64,000 bases of DNA from Eutreptiella sp. 'Long Island Sound 2002' (GCA_964036045.1 OZ038378.1:118420001-118484000), one strand, 5' to 3'; shown: positions 4,788 to 17,100, numbered from the stretch's first letter. Numbers and translations: made by a program. The notes: generated by a model not told the origin, from the letters alone.

Positions 4788-5364
4788 TCGGTGAGGTAGG
4801 TAGGTAGGTAGGTATCTTCGGGAGCTCGGGATGCCTCCCTTGACATTGCAGGAAGAAGGTCTTACCAAGGGGACGTCCTGTCCCTCCCACTGCCCTATGT
4901 CAGGTGCCTCTTGAGCCGCTCCCGCATGTGCTTGGGAAGGCATTGTCGCGGCCACCCGGTCCATGTGTCCCAGGTTGGAGGGTGTCCCCACATGTGTCCA
5001 TGGGTAGGGCCACATGCCCCCTCCTTTGGGCGGCAGCTCTGGGGGCTGCCCAGCCGTGTGGAGTATCTCTCACCACAAGGGGTTTTGCTCCTGCTAGTCT
5101 ACGGTACGTCCGCCTCACCCTTGTGGCTTGAGTTGCGGGGCCACTCTGCTTGGCAGACGACCCCCTCCTGGACTGTATACCGGCTCGCCTGTCACCGGTT
5201 GCTTCCATGGCTCCGGATGACGTTTGCCATGGTCCCCGATGCAGCCTGGCCGGGCTCGGACCAGTGGCCTTGGAGTACCGCTCCTGCCACTGTCCCGGTG
5301 GGTCGGCTGGGTCGCCCCAGTGCGTCCGACCCATGGGGTGTTGGTTCTTTCCTGTCCCTCGGCC

Positions 5365-5560
5365 GCCCTACGTGTGTGCAGTGTCCTGGGCCGCTTGGCT
5401 CCTGTTCACCGGTGTGCCCGCGCGGTTTGCTGTGTTGCGTCTGCGGTGTCCTGGGCCACTTGACTCCTGTTCACCGGTGTGCTCGCTCGGTGTGTTGTGT
5501 TGCGTGTGCGGTGTCCTGGGCCACTTGGCTCCCGGTCACGGGTGTGCGCGCTGTGTCCGG
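5365..5560. repeat. ~62-bp GT-rich tandem repeat, 3 copies
   Basis: gtgtcctgggcc(a/g)cttg(g/a)ctcc unit repeated three times. Confidence 0.8.
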
Positions 5561-7689
5561 TGCGCGTGTGCCATGGGTGGTTGTGTCCCTCTTCCTTCCC
5601 CCCTAATTTTCGTTTTTTTTTTCTTTTTGATGGAAAACAAAGAGAAACTGGGGCGAGCGTACACTGCAGGCACAGGCACGGGCAGCTGGTGCGGCGGTGC
5701 AAAAGTGTTGTGTCCTCTGGCGTGTGTCGTCGGTGCTGTGGCGGCAGTCGCGCCCCAGGGGCGCGGCTCGCGCGTCCTGATGTACACGGGCTTGGGCCAG
5801 GGTGGGTTTGGTTAGGTGTCTCTTTGCTTCTGGAGCTGGCTGGTTAGGCGGCTGTGTGGGCTGTGGGTGTGGGCTGTGGTTACGTTATTCCCTTTGCGGG
5901 CCTGGTTAGGAGTCAAGGGTTAGCGGCTTCGGGGTGTGGCTCGGATTTGATTTATGTTTGGGTTTCGGCTTGGTTAGGTGGTTGCGACGGTAGCAGGCCT
6001 GGGTTCATGCCTTTGGGCGTAGTTGTGCCCGTCGTCGTGTGCGTTGGCGTCCTTCGGCGTCCGGTTTGTTTGGTGACTTCTGGGCGGGGCCTGGCGTGGC
6101 GCCCCGTGGTGGTGGTTTGCTGGGTAACGGGGTGAATTGGCGGCGCCGCTGGCCGGGGGGTCAGGCGCGTCGTGTGGTGTGATGCGCAGGGCTCCTGGTG
6201 TGCTGTGGGTGCCGCCGGTGTCGGTGCGTCGACGCTTGTTGGGTGGTGAGGGGGTGTGTGTGTGCGGGGCTGCGCTTTGAATGATGTCCCACAGGCGGAT
6301 GCCGTCTCGCTGTGTCTCCTGGAGGGTCTCCCGCAGGCGCCTGAGGACATACGGGTGGTCCTCGGGCGCGAGGAGGTTGCGGGGGTGGACTCTCAGGGGG
6401 TGGAGCGCATCGGCCAGCATGGCTTCTGACGCGGCCTGCGGCATCCGCCCCCCCGCTGGCCGGAGGCGGAAGTTCTTCACCGACCCCTTGCAGGGCCGAT
6501 GGACCAGGCCCTCGAGCGAAGGCTGTCCCTGGGCCCACTTTCGCAGCTCCCAGAGCTGCGTGTGGGTCCAGCGCTGCCACCACTGTCCCTGGGCGGGCCT
6601 GCGGTCTTTGGCGGAGGAGTGGGCGTGGGTGGGTGTGACGGGGTCGTGGGGACCGGTGGCCGTGGCGGGCCTGGGGGATTCCTCGTAGTCCTGTTCCGTG
6701 GGGGTGCGCGGGGAGTGGGGGCGCGCGCGGATGTGGACCCGCGGGTGTGCGCGCACGGTCTCCGCCTCGGGGTTGGGCGGGGACTCGAGGTGGCGGCGGT
6801 AGTGGGGCATGCGCTGTATGTGGGCTGTCATCGAGGGTTGGTAGGGGGGCGGGGACGCTGCTGGAGGACCCTGGCGTCGTTCTGGCCTGGTCGGGGGCGG
6901 TCCGTGGGCCTGGGGTGCGGGCTTTGAGAGGTGGCGGGACGAGGTGCGCAGTGCTTCGGCCGCGACGCGCTCCGCTATGAAGGTGGTGGCGGCAGCGTCG
7001 GTGACGGTGGCGGGGCGCCGTGCTGGGCGCTGCTTCCTCCGGGCCTGGGAGGGCTGGGGCTGAATGTCATAGAGGATGTCCTCGGGGGGCCGGGCTCGCG
7101 CTGCCGTTGTGGCCCCGGGTTTTGACTTGGGTTTAGGCTTGGCTGCGGTTTGCGGTCGTGGCGCGCCGACGGGTTTGGGTGGCTGTTTGGCGGCAGTCTT
7201 GGGTTTCGGCTGGGTCGCGGGTGTGGGCCTCGTCTGGGCGTGCGCCTTGGCGGCAGCGGGGTTGCTCGCGGTGGGGGCGGGTTTGGGGGCCCGTTTGGGA
7301 GGTGTCCTCCGCGGCCTGGGGGGTGGAGTGCTGGATGAGGACGTGGTGGTGGTGGTGGATGAGGTGGTCTTGGTGGTGGAGGTTGTGGAGTCGAAGGCTG
7401 AGGAGAGGGCTGTGGGAGATGGCGGAGGGTTTTGGGCTTCGGGGGCGGGCGTAGGATGCTCGGTCCTGCAAGTAGTGAGAACGAGGGTGCGGGTTCGGGC
7501 ACCGGGCGTGTGCGCGCGTTTTCCCTGGTGATCTGTGTGTGCTGGTGCTGGTGTGGCGGCGTTGTCTCGGCTGCGCGGGGACGTGGGTTACCCGTGGGCC
7601 GGCCATATCTGCTCCACGACGTGCGGGTGTGTTTGCTAGAGGTATTTGAGGGTGCGGAAGAAGCATCGCTGGTTGCCGGGCATGTCCTG

Positions 7690-8640
7690 CTCTGTGAGGT
7701 GGGGGTAGTATTGGGTGGGGGTGTCTGGGCCCGGCCACAGCAGCGCCATGAGGCGGGCTGCCACCATGTATGGGCAGAGCTGTAGGGTGGTGGGGCGTGG
7801 GGGGGCTGGTCTGCTGCGGTTTGGGGGGGCTTCTCTCTGCTGGGGGCGCAGCCTGACCACCCACACCCACCGGTCCGTGGGGATCCCCCAGGTCCGTTGG
7901 GTCCACTTGGCGAGGCAATACATCGCCCTACCAAGGCGCTGGCTGCCGCTGCGGATGGAGAGCAGCGTATCCAGGGAGTTGCGTTCCCACGTGCCCAAGA
8001 TGTGGGGGTCGTCCGGGTCGTCCCCCCTGGCGTACGTGTCGAGGCCTGGGTTTTGTGGGGGGGGTGCGTAGTCGGCGGGGAGGAGGGAGTCCGTGCCGTG
8101 TACCACCCTGTGGTCAGTGGGTGCGTGGTAGTGGGTGGTGGAGAGGGTGTAGTGCAGATTGTACATGAGGTTCATGTACGTAAAGGGGGCTGGCTGCTGG
8201 TCGTCGGGGGTGGGGATGTCCCCCGGGACGTGGTGCCGGAAGTTGCTCAGGGAGGCCATCCGGGCTACCCATGTTTCCCGCTCCCACTCTCTGGTGTTGT
8301 TGGGGGTGGCGCCGGGTGGGGGTTTGGCCAAGTTGGGCTCGCGGTAGCGGGTGCGGCCCTGGGTGCTGTCCCGCTCCGGCAGGGGTGTCCGACTAGGTGT
8401 CGCCCACAGCCGATGGGGGGCACCCAGATCCGGCTGCCCGTGGGGGGCGGGCTTTCGCCGTCTGGGGTGGCGCGTGGGGGGCGGTCGTGTCGGGCGACGT
8501 GGAGGAAGGCGTCGAAGAGGAAGTCTCGGACGCCTTCCGCAGGGTGGCCGCCTGGACCAGAGTGGCCGCCCGGATGCGGGTGCTGGTGCCGAAGGTGCGG
8601 AGGCACAGCAAGTCCTGTTCCCCGAGTCCCCGGAGGTGCT
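7690..8640 (-). pseudogene. Ulp1/SENP-like (peptidase C48-like) cysteine protease region
   Basis: DLLCLR...GVRDFLFDAFLHV...MNLMYNLHYTLSTT (His 8152-8154)...VVHGTDSL (Asp 8089-8091)...RPQQ (7837-7842)...QLCPYMVA (Cys 7774-7776). The order matches clan CE, but the spacings are longer than canonical. Confidence 0.55.
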
Positions 8641-11157
8641 GCCGTACCGCTGCGGGGTTGTGTAGGGCGTAGGGTTCGGCCGGTGCGGCGGCTGGTGGTG
8701 CGGGGTGTGATGGGGGGGGTGGAGTGGGTTGGGGGGGGTGGTCGTCGTTGTCGCGCGTGGGGTCCGGTGATGGGGTCTCTTGTGGCGGTCGCGGGAGGGG
8801 GGATTCGCGGCTGGCGTGTGTCGGCGGGGGCATCAACGTCAATTGGCTGGTGCTGGCTGCCGCGTGTTGCGTCCGTGGCCTGGTCTCGGGGGGGGGGGGC
8901 GGGGGGGGGGGGTGTGGGGTTGGCGCTGTTGGTGGACGGGGGGGGCGGGGGTAAGTGTTATGCTGGATGGGGGTCTGGGCGTTTCTGTGGGTCGTGTGGG
9001 TGTTGCGTGTGTTCGCCGTGCGGTCCCTGCGGTTCTAGGCTGGTTTTGGTGCCGGGGTGTGGGTGGGAGGCGGCCGCATGGGCGTCCGGGTGGGGCTGTG
9101 GTCCGTATGTAATGGGTGGCTGCTGGTGGATGGTGCTCGCTGGTATGGGGTGTGGGTGGGGGGGCGGCTGCTGGTGGTGGGGCGTTCCTACTAGGCCCGG
9201 GTGTTGCTGGTGTGCGTGCGCGGCTCCCCGCGGGTCCATGGGGGTGTACCGTGGCTCGTGTGTCGTGGGCCCGTGTAGCGGGGGCGGCGGGTGGTGCTGG
9301 ACCGCGTGGTGGTGGTGTTGAGGGTGTGCTGGTTATGTGTGGTACCCCGGCGTTGGTGGGTGTGGTGGTAGGGGCTGGTGGTGGTGGAAGACGTGATGGT
9401 GTGGTGCGGTGATGTGTGCCATGTGGGGTGGGTGGTTCGTGGGGCCTGGATGTTTTCGGGCGTGGTGGGGATGTAGCTGGTGCGGGTCGCTGTAGCATGG
9501 GAGTATTAGGGGGTAGGGGTTGGGAGGGACGGGGGCGTGGTGGTGGTGTTGGTGGTGCCATGTCCCCTGGCTCTGCGCGTATGGTGGTCCTGGCATGGTG
9601 TGGACGTGTGTGGGCGGTGGTGGCTGACTGCGCTGCAGGGTTTGGGTGCTGCGGTACGGTGGTGGTGGTGGGCGCTGGCGGGGGCGGTGTTGTTGGTGTG
9701 CCCCGGAGGTCTGGGCGTGGGGTGGTGCGGTGTGGCTGGACCCGGGCCCTGGTCGGGGCGTCGCGCCCTGCTGGCGGGCGCGCCGGCGGGCTCCCTGACC
9801 TGTCTTGGTCTTCTTGGCCTGGTGGGTGTCGGGGGCGGGTGAATCCCCCTGTCCCCGTTGGGGCGACGGGGAGCGGTCGTGCCAGCGGTGCGCCTCTTGG
9901 AGGCTTGTCTTGAGGCCTCTGACGTAGGTGCTCTGGTCCGTGAGGCCCATCCGTGTGGCAGTGGCCTCGTCGGGGGCGGCCAGGTGGGCGTCCCGAAAAG
10001 ACGCCCAGCCCTCCGGGGACTTCTGTTGTGCGGGGTGGGGTTGGTGTGCCGGGTAGAGGAGTGCGCTGAGTGGGTAAGGTGTTCCCTTTCGTCGGCCGAG
10101 GGCGGTGTTGAACCGGCGGCAAGTGATTCGGAGGTAGGCTGCTATATCCTCTGGTGTCGTGTCCGCCCACGCTTCTGGCGTCAGGGCTGCTGCTTGGGGG
10201 GCCGGGATTTGTGGGTCTGGGAGGTGTAGGTCACGGGGGTGGAGGTATAGGGCGAGGAGGATGTGGCTGGCTGCCACGTTCAAGCCGCCTCCGCTGTGGC
10301 GTAAGGGTGGGCTGTGGGGGGGCAGGGGTGTGCTGCCCGTGGCCACGGCAGTGGTCCATGCGTGGTCCGCCGCGTCCGCCACGTAGTACCCTCCCAGGTG
10401 GTCCTGGAGGGTGTCGGTGAGTGGCCCGAAGAAGCTGGGGTGGCTGGCGGGGGGGGGGTGCGGCTGGGGCCGCGGGCCGCTGGCGGTGGTGGGGGTTGAG
10501 GTTTCCGCAGTGGGGGCAGTGGGTGAGGCGGTGCGCGGCTCCCGGGCAGACCCAGTGGTCTGGGTTGCAGGGCAGGGCCGTCTGTGGTAGCCGCTAGCGT
10601 ACACAGAGGGGACATGCGGTGGCTGACGGTTGGTGGCACCTGTGGACGGACGGCGGCGCCGGGGGATGGGGGCTGGTGGCGCGCGCATGCTGGTGGGAGT
10701 GCGTGCGGTGCCTGTGGTGCCCGTGTGTGCCGTGCCAGTGTTGTGCTCGGTGGATGGTGTGTAGACGTGGTGGGGGTTCCGTGTTGGTGTGTCATGGGGT
10801 AGGTTCTCATGGTTGGTAGAACAGGAGTTTGAGGAGGTGGGCTTGGTCTGTTTGGGGCAGGGTTGCTGCATGCTGCAGGTATTTGTGGGTGCGGTATGTG
10901 AGCTGCCCCGCTGTTTTTGCAACGACCGTCCGCTGCATGTGCGCCGCCGTGGCCTGGGGGTCCTCCGCGTGGGTGCGTAGCAAGGTGTAGACGGCAGTGG
11001 GGACGAGTCCCCTGCGGACTGCCTCGAGTACCTCCGTCTGCTTGAGGACGGTGGTGAGTTGCTGGGTCGCCGGGGACTGCGTCAGCCATCCGGTGTGCTG
11101 TGCTATGGTGTGGGTTGGGTTCCAGTCTGTGAGGGTGTCCAGTCCTCTGTACAGGGG

Positions 11158-11209
11158 GCACACCTTGAAGTGGTTTCAGGTTTCATCTTCCGCGTGGCCA
11201 CAGACGCAT
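11158..11209 (-). pseudogene. CCHC zinc motif of non-LTR ORF2
   Basis: CVCGHAEDET*NHFKVC; the TGA is likely a decayed TGG. Confidence 0.7.
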
Positions 11210-11604
11210 TTGGTGTATCCTGCGGGGACGTGGATCGAGCGGCGCGCATACCATCGGTGGTATCGGGTGAGGAGGGGAGGCTGTTGGAGGGCGAGTTGGA
11301 GTCGGGGTTTTTGTTGGTGTGCTGGGAGGCTATTCAGGGGCAGGGCGGAGTAGTAGAGGGGGGTGTGGACGGAGTCTTCGAGGCGTCGGAGGAGTTCGGT
11401 GTTCGCTGGGTGGCCCAGTGTGGTGGCCAGTTGCTGGATGGGTGTGGGGTAGTGGTACTGCTTGTCTCGATCTGTGTACGGCGTGTCCTCGGGCATCCAT
11501 TGGGGGGGCTGTGTGGCCGGGGGTATCGGGGGCAGGTGCTGCAGGTGGCTGTGGTGTGGAGTGTCCAGTCGCACGTGTTCGAGCCCTGGGGTGTGGCTGG
11601 TGTT

Positions 11605-12050
11605 CTGGTGTTTGGCCTGCGTGTCTGCGCGTTCATTGCCGTATGCGTAGCGGTGTGACTCCTGTTTGACGATGTGTAGGGCGTCCTGGGGGTGCATGCC
11701 CCTGAAGGCCATCCATAGTCCCAACGCTTGTGTGCCGAGGCCTGACTCGAGTGCCTTGCGGAGGGGCAGGTCCGCAAGGCGGCTGGTGAGGTGGATGTCG
11801 ACCGTGGCGTCCACGACTACCTAGATGTTGCGGGGCCGGATCGTTGTGGGTGGCGGTGTGGCGGTGACGGCGTCTGCCATGGTGCGCAGGTCGCCGTGGG
11901 AGGACGCCCCAAAGATGGTGGCCCCGGTGTGCTGTTCCACGTGGAGGCCGTCCGCGTGCCTGGTGATGCGCACGGAGGCGCAACGGACCGTGGGGGTGCG
12001 TTGCTTGGCGCCGGATGCGTCAGTGAAGTAGATGATGTCGGTGTCGCTGG
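11605..12050 (-). pseudogene. RNase H domain of the non-LTR element
   Basis: IIYFTDASG...GASSHGDL...VDATVD...VKQESHRYAYGNERADTQAK, with a frameshift near 11815. Confidence 0.85.
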
Positions 12051-13528
12051 GTATGGGTAGGCAGGCAATTGATGTGGGGTGATAGACGTATATGGGGTTC
12101 GCTTGGGCGGTTCTGGCGGTGATTTGCGTGGGTTGTAGTAGTAGCACTGCATAGACGCCTATCCCCTGGGTGATGATGGCCTTGGCTCGTGGGGTGAGGC
12201 GGAGGAGGCCCCAGTCTGGGCACCCCTGGGTGATATACGCGTACATCAAGGGGAAGAGGTATCCCGTATTGGGGTGGAACTTCCGGCACGTGATGGTCTT
12301 CGCCGCTCCTTGTCCTCTTTGTCACCGTGGAGGGTGGGGCCTTTGTGCTGTAGGGGGCGCATGGGTGCCTCCTGAGGTCCTGCGCGGTGTGGGACGTACT
12401 CTATTGCCACGCTGTCCGGGTCTGCCAGCTCGTTGGTGAACCTCCATGTCGCCGTGGGTGTTCGGGTCCAGGCTACGTGTGCCGGGTGGTCTGTGGGTAC
12501 CGTGTGAAACCAGGGGGAGAGCCATGCCTGCTGGTCGGCGGTGGCGGCGGCGGTGGGGGTGTGGTAGTGGGTGGAGATGAGGCGTAGCAGGGGCCACGGA
12601 GTGGCCAGGGCTGCTGGACCGCAGTGCCAGCACGTGCGTGGTACGCCCTGGTCACTGTGTCTGACTGGTGGTACATCGGTCTCCGGTGCATTGTGTTTGG
12701 GGATGGACCAGGGGGCTTGGTGTCGCTGGACAGTGCGGGTAGCATGTTTGTGGCCGTTGGGTGCTAGTAGCAGGATGGTGGGTGGTGTCCAGCCTTCAGC
12801 TGACGGGTTGGGCTCCTCTTGCGTCGTGCCGCCGTTGTTGAGGGTCTCGTGCTCGCTCGGGCGGGGCCAGGGGTGCTGGCGCTGGAAGGCTGTGTACACC
12901 GTGTCGATGTCCTTGGGCCCCGGCATGTCGCGCCCTGCTCTTGTAGCACATGCGCGGATGTACGCTTGGAAGACGTGGCGTGCTGGCCATTGTGGGTCGG
13001 AAAGGAACAGGGCGCGGTGGGCGTCGCATTGGGCCATGATCCTCATCTGTGTTGGGGTGATATACACTATGGTGACGGTGGCCCCCACGAGGCGCAGGGT
13101 GTCCACCTCGCCTGCCGGGTGTCGGTGGATGTATGTCTGCGTGGCCACGAGTGGCCCCTGTTGATCGCAGTGGTGGTTTGTCAGGATGGCGTGTGTGTGG
13201 TGTGGTAGGACGAGCTGTAGCTGGGCCCAGATGCCAGTGCCCACGGAGGTGGAGACGCCGTGTTGCGCGAGTATACACCGGGGGCAGGTGTTGCGGGCCA
13301 TTTGCGCTTCTTTTATGCGTATCGCTGCCGCCTCGCGAACTTCGAATTGGTGGTCGTGTGTCACCCTGTGTAGGAGGTGCCCTGCGTGTTTGGCATAGGC
13401 AATGTCGATCAAAGCGCCTGTATTGTCTCTGTAGTAGCGCCAGTGGGCCATCATGGCCTCCTTGGGGAAAGACGTGGGCCAGCCTCCGTGTTGCGCCCAT
13501 GCCTTCGTCACTTGCTGTCGAGCGTGGC

Positions 13529-14195
13529 TTAGGGCGTCTTGGGGGCGGGGGAGGTGCAGGGCTTGGTACCCGATGGCCGCATTGAGCACCGCTTCCATGA
13601 AGTACGCCAGGTCCTGCGTAGACAGGAGGTCCCCCCTGGCAATTTGGGGTAGCCGGGCGAGGCGCTCTTCCAGCTTGCTTGGGAGTGTGATGTGGTGGTG
13701 CCGCGTGGCCTACGTGACTCCCAGGTGGACTGTGGTGTCTTCCAGGTGTAGGAGTTCACCTTTCCGGATGTGGGGGGTGGGGTCCTGGTGTCGGCCAGCC
13801 CGACCCATTTGCGCGGGTGCACTGGGAGCTGGTGGGCGTCCAGGTAGGTTGTGGTGAGTTGGAGAATGGCGGACGCTTGCTCGGTGGTCGTTGGTAGCCC
13901 TGCGTTCTCAGGGTGATGGTTGCGGGTGGCCGTAGTTAGGAGGTTGTCGTCCGAAAAGTTGATGAGGGGGGACTGTAGCGGGTATGGGGCGTACCCCGGG
14001 GATACCCGTGCTAGCTTCAATGCCAGTGGCAGGGTGAAGAGGAGGTAGCGGAAGGGGCCTTTGGCGCCTCCCTGGGGGACCTCGCTGTCTGTGCCGGTCC
14101 AGGGGGTGAGGCCTGCGGCTGTGATGACGGCGTAGAGGCGGGTCTGGATGTACCCGGTCATGAAGGATAGGAATGGGAGGCCGATGGCATCCCAT
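13529..14195 (-). pseudogene. Non-LTR reverse transcriptase, C-terminal half
   Basis: WDAIGLPFLSFMTGYIQTR...VPQGGAKGPF (QG..SP motif)...NFSDD (YADD-equivalent)...VHPRK. The N-terminal RT part is missing. Confidence 0.85.
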
Positions 14196-14199
14196 ACCT

Positions 14200-17100
14200 G
14201 AACCTGAACTGTTGCGGCTGCAGCTGTATGAGTCTACAACACAGCAGCAGCAGGCTCCAGCGGAGCCGATGATCCTGTTGAGCCCTGTGAAGGCAGCAGC
14301 GTTGGATCCACAAGAATCAGTGCCGCCGACGCTGTCTGCAGCTAGCGTGCTAGTCAATGTGGAGAGGCATCGCTGGGTTGATCAACATGGGTGTCCGCAC
14401 GAGTGGCAAGCCATCAGCCACACCGGTGACCACGTTGAGCGCTTGCATCAGGTAGGAGACGGCGTGAGGAAGCTTCGTGAAGCTATGACTGCTGTCACGG
14501 ACGCGCTGAGATCGGGACTGAACAGGGATCAGCAGGTGTTTGATCTGTTGAAAACCCTCGATCATCACTTTGCAGGCATCGCTGTTGATCTGGAGACCAT
14601 GAGAGGAGACATGTCGGCACTGGGCAACGCCGTCACCGCTGCACAGCGCGATATGGGAGACCTATGGCCTGATCATCGCGGCCTGCAAGAGGTTCACAAC
14701 ACCGCCATGTCAACGGTGGAGCGCAGCGTCAACGAGCTGCTGCAAGTGGCAGCAGCAGCGCGCCTACGGCGGTTGGAGGAGTCCTCAACGCGTGCAGAGG
14801 CGAGCAGCAAGGGCTGCCACGTACCATCGAAGGTGTGCGAGCCTCAGTGAACGCCAGCGGGCTGCAGCTCAGCAGCCACATCCACAACGTGTCCTCCTCC
14901 CTGAACGACATGGGGCAGCGCGTGGGCGCGTTGGCGCGCCAGGAGGCGGCCATCGCGCAGGCTTACGGGCGCATCACGCAGGAGACAGCGGAAATCAGGA
15001 GGGTTACAGCCTCTACTGAGCAGGTCAGCACTCCTCAGCGTGTGGTATATGGGTTAGAGCCGAAGGTGGGAACGTTAGAGTGTCAGTACCAGACCTTAAG
15101 AATCCGGCAAACAACGGTGATGGAACAGTCAGACAGGACAGCAAACTTGTTGGATGAGCGCATCATCACAATCCGAGCGACGACGTCGCACCTGAACTAC
15201 TGTGAACAAAACTTTGCAAACAGCGCTCAACAGAATCACCATACTGGAAAAGGGTACTGGCGCCTCCACAGACTCTCAACCTCTTGAGCCACCCAATGAC
15301 CCTCCTCCTTCTCACTCGTGCTCTGGCAGCGACGGGTGCTGCCCCTGGTGTGCATCTAAGGTGTCTTCGTTGGAGGACGCCAATGAAGCCCTTGAGCATG
15401 AAGTGGCTCGGCTGAACCCACAGTACATTGACTTCAGGCGCCAGGTGTTACACCAGAGCGAGGACAAGGCCTCTTGGGAGGGGAGGTCTTGAGTGAAATG
15501 AGGGAGAGCCTCGAGGCCATCTGGCGCCAACACCTGGAGGAGATCAGGGACTGTCACCATCGCCTGATACTGGCGGAATCAGGTTCGGATCGCCTGCAAA
15601 CAGAGGTCATGAATCCGTTGGCCAGGAAGGTCAACGAGCTGGACAGGCAGTGTGCGTCTTTACAACGACAAGTTCAACACAACGCCCAGGAGTTGGCGCT
15701 GGTAAAAGGACCGCAGCAAGTGCCTGGACCACGGGCCCCACTCCTGGACGTATCCACCTCCTTGAATTTTGATGTGGCGGCGGTGGAAGCCCGAGTGGCG
15801 GAACATGACACCTCCTTCCGGGTTTTGGAGACGCAGCTCCCAGAGGTCGTTAATGGTATGGAGACGCTCACGAATTCGATGGAACAGATAAGAGGAAAAA
15901 TACAGGAGTGGGAAGATGAGTATGCGGATGAAAGGGAGGAGGGTCCAGACACCCCTGATCCTCGCCCAAACGTGAACCCCCTTCCCAGCCTTTCGCATCC
16001 CACATACCCCGCCAAGGCCGACCCTGGGGCTCCGCCACATGTTTCGACGGGAGAGGGCATTTGTTTCTCTTATTGCCAATATGGAGAGACTACGCCTGCA
16101 CCGGGGGTTCGGAAGCAGTTTTCTGGGTCGGGGGACATTCTCAGGTCGCACACCAACCACTCCGAAGCCAGCGGCAAGCGCCCCAACTTTGCTACATGAA
16201 GCGGGCGGCGCTACGTTTGACGTTTCAGCGCTGGACATGAAAGGCACCACCCATGATCGGGAGAAGCACGTGAGTTTCTCCAACGTGCAGGAATTTTTCA
16301 AGAGTGACCCCCTCTCAGCTATGGGTAGCTTGCCTTCGTTTGGGGGGACGGGTAAGGCCCCAGTCCTGGGCACACCCGACCTAGGGTCTTTTTCTGTACC
16401 TGATTGCTCCGTGCCCGGCAGTGCCCCCACCCACAAGGACCCAAATGTTCAGGTCAGGGTGCTGTTCAACACCGACAAGCTGGGGTTAGAAACCCTAGAC
16501 CCCGAGACTAGGCAAGTCATTAAAGACCTCCCCAAGAGGCTGGTCTTCCGAGGAGACTGGGCCACGTTTGAGCCTGAATGGGACCGTTACAGGGGTTTTT
16601 GTCGTAAGCGCATGGCGCCAGATCTCCTGGCATATGTTTTCTGCTCATGTTTCCCGGACGAAGGGAACTTATACGCCAGTCTGGCTCGAGATGCCGGCTG
16701 GACATACGAGCAGATATACAGCGTGGCCTCTACTATCGGCCAGGGCAGGGTGTCCGGCGAACTCCTGGAAAAGAAATGGATCGCAATGGACCTGACCCGC
16801 CCAAAAACTCTGGCCAACTACAGCCTTCGGATAATCCACTGGGTGCTACACGCTCGCCGCACAGCACCCAAGTGGGCTATCACCCCACAGCGTGCCAAAC
16901 AGGTGTGGCGCCAGGCGCTTGAGCGTCATGGAGGCCACGGCGCCGAACTTGCCGAGCTGGCAAAGATAGAGGCACTACACAGTGAGTTCACCTGGGAGGC
17001 TGCACACTCCCAGGTGGTGTACAAGCTCACCTGGCGGGATAAGCGCAAGTGACAACAAAAACGCCACGATGAGGCGCAGCCGGCAACTCCAGTGCAGACG

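What the first reader, a model, noticed from the sequence alone, without database searches (positions are those of the whole stretch)
7636..8660. Ulp1/SUMO-protease-like domain downstream of RT-RNase H in a non-LTR element
Seen: His (NLHY), Asp (TDSL), Gln (PQQ) and Cys (LCPY) in clan CE order, plus an N-terminal DLLCL...DFLFDAFL segment, all between the ORF2 stop (10807) and the A-rich tail (5613-5628). Established: Ulp1-like proteases occur in NeSL-type LINEs upstream of RT and in some DNA transposons. Inference: a 3'-located protease on an RNase H-bearing LINE is an unusual layout, possibly a de-SUMOylase countering host silencing or a polyprotein protease. Caveats: Gln-Cys spacing is ~20 residues versus ~5 canonically, and the segment might be ORF1 of an adjoining element.
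Basis: partly seen in the sequence, partly recalled or inferred. Interest (0 to 1): 0.78.

Follow-up and report, generated by a model that had tools for sequence, protein, structure and literature searches.

The report
Possible protease domain in Euglena LINE
A worn copy of a very abundant Euglena jumping gene (a LINE) carries, after its reverse-transcriptase gene, a third conserved reading frame whose end looks like a SUMO-protease (Ulp1) active site, but no statistical or structural test confirms that resemblance.

Summary
In this window they lie in three frames, because of private 1-bp indels. In other copies they form one open frame.

They end a roughly 1,065-codon ORF3. ORF3 follows ORF2 (RT, RNase H-like motifs, CCHC) in the same frame, after two conserved TGA codons. 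The element is a 5'-truncated APE-type LINE spanning window 14196-4794. It ends in (TACC)n, so the A-run at 5613-5628 is internal.

The domain is real coding sequence and belongs to the element. A sister LINE family keeps it directly behind ORF2 at 26-30% identity, with His, Asp and Cys retained. In-frame dN/dS is 0.65, against 0.9-1.0 out of frame and 0.3 for RT.

Membership in Ulp1/C48 is not shown:
- Pfam, PDB profile and hhalign searches are negative, though this family's RNase H-like region also escapes Pfam and PDB sequence searches.
- The AlphaFold model is weak (pLDDT 59) and matches no clan CE fold.
- Support comes only from motif order, predicted secondary structure and protein-language-model neighbours carrying PF02902.

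I put the Ulp1-like reading at about 0.45. Other readers in this scan noted the same idea on other copies in this genome.

The parts
4794..14196 (-). 5'-truncated copy of an abundant, young APE-type LINE family (about 9.4 kb kept).
   Evidence: blastn against copy C5 (L033+L038) gives 94% identity from window 14196 down to 4798. The domain probe found more than 2,700 candidate places in the genome and the RT probe more than 1,900, and the 40 scored for each were 94-97% identical. 5' ends differ between copies.
13511..14200 (-). Reverse transcriptase, with its N-terminal part missing in this copy.
   Evidence: tblastn to the C5 RT gives 83% identity. Pfam RVT_1 scores 43-50 bits on intact copies L033:6179-7189 and L034:4778-6313. 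The window ORF scores only 15 bits.
12372..13673 (-). Conserved ORF2 region between the RT and the RNase H-like region (thumb or linker).
   Evidence: tblastn gives 90% identity to C5. dN/dS is 0.36 against an older subfamily.
10810..12165 (-). RNase H-like region (FTDASG, HGDL/HGEL, VVVDAT, ESH..YGNERAD) and a CCHC knuckle (VCGHAEDET..VCP at 11205-11143), ending ORF2.
   Evidence: The motifs were read directly. dN/dS is 0.33. The region is 44% identical in sister family L054. Pfam and PDB sequence searches do not detect RNase H.
10792..10809 (-). ORF2/ORF3 junction: TGA, four codons, then TGA. ORF3 continues in ORF2's frame, and an ATG overlaps the first TGA (CCATGA) in another frame.
   Evidence: The junction is identical in layout in the window and four other copies.
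10504..10617 (-). Cys/His cluster near the start of ORF3 (CPLC..C..H..C..HCPHC), RING-like.
   Evidence: Read directly. Pfam zf-C3HC4_3 and Sina_RING match only at E about 1.5 and 9 bits, far below their cut-offs.
9435..10433 (-). ORF3 N-terminal globular-looking part, function unknown.
   Evidence: tblastn gives 89% identity to C5. In-frame dN/dS is 0.63 against about 1.0 out of frame. No Pfam family matches.
8684..9434 (-). Pro/His/Thr/Gln-rich low-complexity linker of ORF3.
   Evidence: Translations. This part is absent from sister family L054, where the domain follows ORF2 after about 250-325 nt.
7636..8683 (-). C-terminal domain of ORF3 with Ulp1-like motif order. Candidate residues are His 8154-8152, Asp 8091-8089, Gln-Gln 7842-7837 and Cys 7776-7774. 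This copy is broken by two frameshifts (near 8539 and 8381) and a premature stop at 7638-7636.
   Evidence: It is one frame in other copies. It is conserved in sister families. dN/dS is 0.65. The language-model neighbours carry PF02902.
6142..6948 (-). Further conserved coding-like stretch downstream of ORF3 (the 'tail ORF', WQRWTHTQLWELRKW...).
   Evidence: tblastn gives 89% identity to C5. In-frame dN/dS is 0.59 against about 1.0 out of frame. It has a weak match in sister family L054 (36% over 66 aa, E=4e-4).
5613..5628 (-). Internal A-rich run, not the element's tail.
   Evidence: Homology with other copies continues about 800 bp beyond it.
4794..4814 (-). 3' terminus of the element: a (TACC)5 microsatellite.
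   Evidence: Five termini (window, C5, C11 and two in C4) end in TACC repeats followed by unrelated DNA or, at one C4 terminus, by the next copy.

Best explanation
Window 8683-7636 (minus strand) is the decayed C-terminal domain of a third reading frame (ORF3) of an APE-type LINE from a Euglena genome. The layout of the family is [APE]-RT-RNase H-like-CCHC (ORF2), then TGA-4 codons-TGA, then ORF3 (a RING-like Cys/His cluster, an unknown domain, a Pro-rich linker and this domain), then a further conserved ORF, then (TACC)n.

Shown: the domain is part of the element, is protein-coding, and has been kept behind ORF2 in two LINE families that have diverged deeply.

Inferred: the domain is a highly diverged cysteine isopeptidase of the adenain/Ulp1 type (clan CE). 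In this reading His178 sits on a beta strand, Asp199 follows the next strand, Gln283 is the oxyanion residue, and Cys304 is at the start of a helix. Three Pro-rich loops are inserted, including 16 extra residues between Gln and Cys.

My most likely mechanism is that the element's protein removes a ubiquitin-like modifier (SUMO-type), either from its own RNP or from host factors that would otherwise restrain it. A less likely mechanism is that it cuts an ORF2-ORF3 read-through polyprotein. How ORF3 is translated is unknown; read-through of the two TGAs, reinitiation or a separate mRNA are all possible.
For: Linkage:
- The domain lies inside the element in all copies compared.
- Sister family L054 has the order RT (56% aa identity), middle region, RNase H/CCHC (44%), then the domain (26-30%). 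L053 has the same order from RNase H onward.

Coding:
- In-frame dN/dS is 0.65, against 0.90 and 1.03 in the other two frames. ORF2 parts give 0.30-0.36.
- The exhaustive HMMER search found 133 relatives and the word search 613, all in one ENA assembly set, with identities down to 30%.

Residues:
- His178-Tyr179 is among only seven columns that are >=90% conserved across 28 sequences from three families.
- GTD[ST][LM] and [LT]C[PG]Y are kept in families A and B.

Topology:
- The AlphaFold secondary structure is strand, strand (His), strand (Asp), helix, strand (Gln), then Cys at a helix N-terminus. From my own knowledge this is the Ulp1 core order.

Language-model features:
- The first neighbour scores 0.94 with 171 shared features, and 83 of 100 neighbours belong to the PF02902-bearing set.

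Weak collinear hhalign matches:
- IRIRAATLVQAATLGEGVRDFLFD aligns to ITITRKDLLTLAPGQKVNDQIVQFY.
- TKEWE aligns to the region of the conserved Trp.
- PQQ..LCPY aligns to PQQ..DCGVF once the insert is removed.

Fold search:

Sensitivity control:
- This family's APE-like ORF (Pfam only) and its RNase H-like region (Pfam and PDB) are also missed by sequence searches. Negative HMM results therefore carry little weight here.
Against: - No Pfam Peptidase_C48 match at E<=10 for any of 85 members.
- The PDB profile search returned nothing.
- hhalign against canonical Euglena C48 gives probability <=0.14% and E 0.4-0.9.
- The language-model 'recognition' value of 2075 is below the 2300 reached by most known families, and sister-family protein P0128 gave no usable neighbour.
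- The canonical N..DCG is replaced by LC[PG]Y. The Gln-Cys spacing is 21 residues rather than 6. Gln is not kept in one sister copy (HTN).
- Asp199 and the Gln residues are no better conserved than the median column among diverged copies.
- A second conserved Cys (C257, in MYCLAKW) is not explained by the Ulp1 model.
- There is no evidence of expression. No RNA run holds the sequence.
Confidence: 0.45

Rival explanations
1. The domain is a genuine, conserved, element-encoded protein domain, but it is not clan CE. It could have an unknown fold. It could also belong to a different branch of the papain-like superfamily, for example a permuted NlpC/P60- or LRAT-type or a transglutaminase-type thiol hydrolase that uses His178 with Cys257 or Cys304. 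In that case the Ulp1-like motif order is a coincidence of a few residues.
For: - All profile and fold tests for C48 are negative.
- The best structural rows are VASH1 and TseH, not Ulp1, SENP or adenain.
- Conserved Cys257 is unexplained by the Ulp1 model.
- The Gln-Cys spacing and the residues around Cys are non-canonical.
- Asp199 and the Gln residues are not specially conserved.
- Several weak rows have E2/RWD-like alpha/beta folds.
Against: - The language-model neighbours are overwhelmingly PF02902-bearing clusters.
- The order of conserved His, Asp and Cys and the predicted strand and helix context fit clan CE.
- The N-terminal segment aligns, weakly, to the Ulp1 N-terminal motif at the right place.
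- The AlphaFold model is too poor for its matches to discriminate.
Confidence: 0.4
2. The stretch is non-coding 3' UTR of the LINE. The long open frame is a by-product of the stop-poor C/A-rich strand, and the motifs are chance.
For: - All three frames of this strand are open for hundreds of codons.
- Substitutions among 30 young copies are spread evenly over codon positions, 201/190/209.
- ORF3 has no ATG for about 330 codons and is separated from ORF2 by two stops.
- No RNA evidence was found.
Against: - In-frame dN/dS is 0.65, against 0.9-1.0 out of frame, between subfamilies.
- Amino-acid similarity survives to 26-30% in sister families, where the DNA is no longer alignable.
- The even codon-position spread is what dead copies decaying after insertion would show.
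Confidence: 0.07
3. The segment is ORF1, or another gene, of an adjoining element that merely sits next to this RT.
For: The window copy is broken, and the supposed A-tail suggested an element boundary nearby.
Against: - Homology between copies is continuous from the RT through the domain to the (TACC)n end, with unrelated flanks.
- There are more 3' than 5' matches in the genome, as expected from 5' truncation.
- The same order is found in sister families.
Confidence: 0.01

Closest known systems
NeSL-1 and Utopia-1_TSP (nematode RLE-type LINEs with a Ulp1-like protease)
   Same: These are non-LTR retrotransposons that encode a Ulp1-like cysteine protease domain as part of the element (PMC4640811).
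   Different: In those elements the protease is N-terminal, upstream of the RT, within a single ORF of a restriction-like-endonuclease LINE, and it aligns with cellular Ulp1. Here the domain is the C-terminus of a separate ORF3, downstream of RNase H/CCHC in an APE-type LINE, and it cannot be aligned significantly to C48.
Cryptophyte Dualen-1_GCr
   Same: It is a protist LINE with C48 peptidase, APE, RT, RNase H and CCHC in one element (PMC5029228).
   Different: Its C48 lies upstream of the APE and is recognised by domain searches. That element also has a SET domain and a restriction-like endonuclease, neither of which is seen here.
Chlamydomonas Dualen (Josephin-related cysteine protease)
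   Same: It is an algal LINE with RNase H that carries a deubiquitinase-type cysteine protease as an accessory domain (figure legend in PMC9977147).
   Different: It is a different protease clan (Josephin, with a Cys..His order), and the element has dual endonucleases.
Cellular Ulp1/SENP (Pfam PF02902) of the same genome
   Same: The order is the same: an N-terminal hydrophobic motif, His-aromatic on a strand, Asp-Ser-hydrophobic, Pro-Gln-Gln, then Cys at a helix start.
   Different: The canonical Euglena copies have invariant HW, DS, P.Q.N..DCG with a Gln-Cys spacing of 6, and they score 41-91 bits. This domain scores nothing, has HY, DS, PQQ and LC[PG]Y, and carries three Pro-rich inserts.
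Ulp1-like proteases carried by plant Mutator-like and CACTA DNA transposons (my own knowledge, not checked here)
   Same: They are transposon-borne, fast-evolving C48-like domains. The language-model neighbours of this domain are plant 'hypothetical protein' clusters that partly carry PF02902.
   Different: Those are DNA transposons, and I have not shown that the neighbour clusters are transposon genes.

Membership tests
Peptidase C48 / clan CE (Ulp1, SENP, adenain-like) | Significant match to the family profile (Pfam PF02902 at or above 20.7 bits) or to a solved member. | tested here: not met
   There were no hits at E<=1 for the window pieces and intact copies, and none at E<=10 for 85 members. 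The PDB profile search returned nothing. hhalign against seven canonical Euglena C48 domains gave probability <=0.14%.
Peptidase C48 / clan CE (Ulp1, SENP, adenain-like) | Catalytic residues in the order His, Asp (or Glu/Asn), Cys, conserved in relatives. | tested here: met
   His178, Asp199 and Cys304 are present in the majority of family A and in sister-family copies L053 and L054. His178 is >=90% conserved. Asp199 sits at a CpG and is often Asn in dead copies. This is evidence at motif level only.
Peptidase C48 / clan CE (Ulp1, SENP, adenain-like) | Oxyanion-hole Gln about 6 residues before the nucleophile Cys (Q.N..DCG). | tested here: not met
   The Gln283-Cys304 spacing is 21 residues, filled by a Pro-rich insert. 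N and D are absent, and Gln is replaced in L053 (HTN).
Peptidase C48 / clan CE (Ulp1, SENP, adenain-like) | Adenain/Ulp1 three-dimensional fold with the triad juxtaposed. | tested here: inconclusive
   The best model has pLDDT 59 and pTM 0.34. No clan CE match was found in Foldseek PDB, VIA wide, VIA second look, BFVD or the Atlas shape search. The order of secondary-structure elements is compatible.
Peptidase C48 / clan CE (Ulp1, SENP, adenain-like) | Isopeptidase or processing activity on SUMO or another ubiquitin-like protein. | not testable with these tools
   This needs a biochemical assay.
APE-type non-LTR retrotransposon (LINE) with RNase H | LINE-type reverse transcriptase. | tested here: met
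   RVT_1 scores 43.4 and 50.1 bits on intact copies. The window piece is 83% identical to them.
APE-type non-LTR retrotransposon (LINE) with RNase H | Variable 5' truncation, no LTRs, and a simple-repeat or A-rich 3' end. | tested here: met
   5' ends fall at different element positions in four copies. All 3' ends are (TACC)4-5, followed by unrelated DNA or by another copy. The genome holds more 3' than 5' matches.
APE-type non-LTR retrotransposon (LINE) with RNase H | Apurinic/apyrimidinic-type endonuclease upstream of the RT. | tested here: inconclusive
   ORF L034:3300-4844, directly upstream of the RT, has GDVNA-, THPSRTD- and GHRPL-like motifs by eye. There is no Pfam hit even at E<=10. 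This part is absent from the window copy.
APE-type non-LTR retrotransposon (LINE) with RNase H | RNase H domain (D-E-D-H-D) downstream of the RT. | tested here: inconclusive
   The motifs FTDAS, HGEL, VVVDAT and ESH..YGN(E/G)RAD appear in the right order and are under constraint (dN/dS 0.33). There is no Pfam or PDB sequence hit.

The most novel reading that the evidence does not exclude
A euglenid LINE lineage carries, behind its RT/RNase H gene, a small ubiquitin-like-modifier toolkit. It would consist of a RING-like finger and a highly diverged Ulp1-type isopeptidase in an ORF3 that is read through, or reinitiated after, two tandem TGA codons. The element would use this toolkit to strip or redirect SUMO/ubiquitin marks that would otherwise silence it. 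This would be the first 3'-located, separately encoded Ubl protease in an APE-type LINE.
Probability: 0.2. Interest if true: 0.75.

Novelty: new variant of a known kind. Interest (0 to 1): 0.5.

Why it matters
LINEs are usually described as carrying only ORF1 and an EN-RT ORF2. Accessory proteases are known in a few lineages (NeSL/Utopia, Dualen), and there they sit upstream of the RT.

This element has thousands of young copies in a 2.3-Gb Euglena genome, and it keeps about 5 kb of extra coding sequence behind ORF2 under selection. If the terminal domain is a working Ubl isopeptidase, three things would follow:
- Retrotransposons would have captured this enzyme class independently, in a new position.
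- A SUMO- or ubiquitin-based conflict between element and host in euglenids would become plausible.
- There would be a tractable recombinant target for testing it.

Even if the fold turns out to be something else, ORF3 and the tail ORF are unannotated, conserved LINE proteins. They deserve a name in euglenid repeat libraries.

Tried and rejected
- Pfam on the window pieces, intact copies and all 85 alignment members found no C48.
- PADLOC, PHROGs and NCBIfam were not tried, because they are irrelevant to a eukaryotic LINE.
- Single-sequence AlphaFold gave pLDDT 42 and was useless. With an 85-row alignment it gave pLDDT 59.
- Fold searches in PDB (Foldseek), VIA wide, VIA second look, BFVD and the Atlas shape library found nothing above background.
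- hhalign with the Pro-rich inserts cut out aligns PQQ..C only trivially, at E 0.63, and the test is circular by construction.
- A language-model search with sister-family protein P0128 gave no usable hit.
- The codon-position test on 30 young copies was flat, as expected for dead copies, and so uninformative.
- Per-column conservation among diverged but partly frameshifted fragments does not single out the candidate triad, apart from His.
- No run on record as RNA holds the stretch. Laying contigs of four runs only confirmed abundance and the window's private indels.
- I considered an E2 (UBC)-like reading of the tail ORF. It rests on an HxP..C..W.P spacing and Pfam Prok-E2_E at E 0.24. I rejected it because there is no room for the UBC N-terminal half and no PDB hit.
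- Dualen membership was rejected because no restriction-like endonuclease follows the CCHC.
- The Kojima and Fujiwara 2005 Dualen paper is not held in the library.

Full report
**What is in the window.** The minus strand between about 14200 and 4800 is C/A-rich (the plus strand has GC 0.63-0.70 with strong positive GC skew). All three of its frames stay open for hundreds of codons, so ORF length means little here.

- DLLCL at 8614-8600
- DFLFDAFL at 8525-8502
- NLHYT at 8160-8146
- GTDSL at 8097-8083
- RPQQR at 7848-7834
- QLCPY at 7782-7768

In the window they sit in three different frames, and the last frame ends in a premature stop at 7638-7636.

**The family.** A DNA search of the window's own 2.28-Gb assembly found more than 2,700 candidate places. 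The 40 that were scored are 94-96% identical over the whole 1.1 kb. The RT probe found more than 1,900 candidates.

In other copies the motifs lie in one frame. Seventeen of 30 copies keep the 365 codons open. L037:3287-6781 and L038:3713-6907 are open for 1,165 and 1,065 codons. Public contigs show that the window's frame breaks near 8539 and 8811 are private 1-bp changes.

**Anatomy of the element.** I compared only natural copies and built no consensus.
- The window copy is homologous to copy C5 from 14196 down to 4798.
- tblastn maps the parts as follows: RT 14200-13511, a conserved middle region 13673-12372, RNase H-like plus CCHC 12165-10810, ORF3 10791-7600, and a further conserved stretch 6948-6142.
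- Five termini (in four copies) end in (TACC)4-5, followed by unrelated DNA or by the next copy. In the window this terminus is at 4814-4794.
- The A-run at 5613-5628 is therefore internal.
- 5' ends differ between copies, which is the hallmark of a LINE.
- One longer copy has an ORF with APE-like motifs directly upstream of the RT (L034:3300-4844).
- RVT_1 scores 43-50 bits on intact copies.
- Neither the APE-like ORF nor the RNase H-like region is seen by Pfam, and a PDB sequence search of the RNase H-like region also finds nothing, even at permissive thresholds. The RNase H-like region nonetheless has a textbook D-E-D-H..D motif order.
- This last point calibrates the searches: negative HMM results are weak evidence in this lineage.

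**ORF2/ORF3 junction.** ORF2 ends ...LLFYQP-TGA. Four codons later there is a second in-frame TGA, and ORF3 continues in the same frame. An ATG overlaps the first TGA in another frame. This layout is identical in the window and four other copies. ORF3 has no Met for about 330 codons. How it is translated is open.

**Is the domain part of the element, and is it coding?** Both answers are yes.
- An exhaustive HMMER search of 1.84 billion representatives gave 133 hits, and the word search 613. All come from the same ENA assembly set, none carries a Pfam label, and identities run down to 30%.
- Two diverged loci were fetched. L054 has RT (56% aa identity), the middle region, RNase H/CCHC (44%) and then the domain (26-30%). 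The domain lies only about 250-325 nt after the ORF2 end, with no RING-like part or linker. L053 shows the same from RNase H onward.
- An older subfamily copy (L055, 78-85% nt identity) allowed a frame-controlled dN/dS test. RT gave 0.30, the middle region 0.36 and RNase H/CCHC 0.33. The Ulp-like domain gave 0.65, against 0.90 and 1.03 in the other two frames. The ORF3 N-part gave 0.63 and the tail ORF 0.59, each against about 1.0 out of frame.
- ORF3 and the tail ORF are therefore coding and under weaker constraint than ORF2.
- The flat codon-position spectrum among young copies (201/190/209) is what post-insertion decay predicts.

**Is it Ulp1-like? Evidence for.**
- His178-Tyr179 is one of only seven columns that are >=90% conserved across 28 sequences from three families.
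- GTD[ST][LM] and [LT]C[PG]Y are kept in families A and B.
- The predicted secondary structure runs strand, strand (His), strand (Asp), helix, strand (Gln), then Cys at a helix N-terminus. From my own knowledge this is the order in the Ulp1 core.
- The protein-language-model search put a PF02902-bearing cluster first (score 0.94, 171 shared features), and 83 of 100 neighbours were in that set.
- The only local alignments hhalign reports are collinear with the Ulp1 motifs, though each is non-significant.
- The ordered motif pattern occurs elsewhere in 239 kb read in six frames only in two canonical Euglena C48 domains. I wrote that pattern after seeing the domain, so it is not an unbiased test.

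**Is it Ulp1-like? Evidence against.**
- No Pfam C48 hit for any member.
- No PDB profile hit.
- hhalign probability is <=0.14%.
- Model pLDDT is 59, and no clan CE chain appears in five structure libraries.
- The language-model recognition value is low, and the result did not repeat with P0128.
- The Gln-Cys spacing is 21 residues, and N..D is absent.
- Asp and Gln are no more conserved than the median column.
- A second conserved Cys (C257) is unexplained.

**Weighing it.** I put the clan CE reading at about 0.45. Another fold, or another thiol-hydrolase branch, gets about 0.4. Non-coding gets about 0.07. The 'ORF1 of a neighbour' idea is refuted.

**Comparison with known elements.** Ulp1-like proteases are described at the N-terminus of NeSL and Utopia-1_TSP (PMC4640811). 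A C48 domain lies upstream of the APE in a cryptophyte Dualen (PMC5029228). Chlamydomonas Dualen carries a Josephin-type protease (PMC9977147). I found no description of a Ubl-protease-like domain in a separate ORF behind RNase H/CCHC of an APE-type LINE. If the fold is confirmed, this is a new variant of a known kind.

First readers of this scan made the same suggestion on other copies in this genome (s1-199748 and s1-213044), so this window is not the first sighting. Those notes carry no follow-up.

**Limits.**
- Model coordinates could not be inspected.
- No RNA run holds the sequence.

Noticed in passing
window 10792-10809 (minus strand); L038:3695-3712: ORF2 and ORF3 are in the same frame, separated by TGA, four codons and a second TGA. 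An ATG overlaps the first TGA (CCATGA) in another frame. The layout is conserved in the window and four other copies. It suggests read-through or termination-reinitiation.
   Followed up: partly
window 10504-10617 (minus strand); L038:3713-4900 residues 58-96: A Cys/His cluster (CPLC-x12-C-x4-H-x2-C-x8-CPHC) sits at the start of ORF3. Its only Pfam matches are two RING-finger models that span the whole motif, at E about 1.5 and 9 bits.
   Followed up: partly
window 6142-6948 (minus strand); L038:7535-8347: A further conserved coding-like stretch lies downstream of ORF3. In-frame dN/dS is 0.59, against about 1.0 out of frame. It has a weak match in sister family L054. There is no Pfam or PDB match apart from Prok-E2_E at E 0.24.
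   Followed up: partly
window 4794-4814; the 3' ends of copies C5, C4 and C11 within L036-L039: The LINE ends in a (TACC)4-5 microsatellite rather than poly(A). In C4 a 5'-truncated copy starts 1 bp after the TACC end of another copy, in a head-to-tail arrangement.
   Followed up: partly
L033:4699-6015 (G000:C5, upstream of a copy's RT): A 439-codon open frame of ordinary (not C/A-rich) composition with no Pfam match abuts the LINE exactly where homology to all other copies begins. It is probably an unrelated gene or element into which that copy is truncated.
   Followed up: no
window 14173-16199 (plus strand): A run of plus-strand ORFs with coiled-coil-like, Gln/Glu/Leu-rich sequence lies directly beyond the LINE's truncated 5' end.
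   Followed up: no
G000:C1:197535377-197535673 and at least 10 similar places: A repeated sequence carries a canonical PF02902 match (about 31 bits, profile positions 85-187) inside open frames of 985-1,182 codons. It looks like a transposon-borne genuine C48 domain in the same genome. It could not be fetched.
   Followed up: no
L053:4494-7397 (minus strand): An element with RVT_1 next to a Phage_integrase (tyrosine recombinase) gene, of DIRS type, lies just upstream of the sister-family LINE copy.
   Followed up: no
L031:2638-6462: A 1,275-codon Ty3/Gypsy-type pol (RVT_1, RNase H, integrase, chromodomain) lies about 10 kb upstream of one LINE copy on G000:C6.
   Followed up: no
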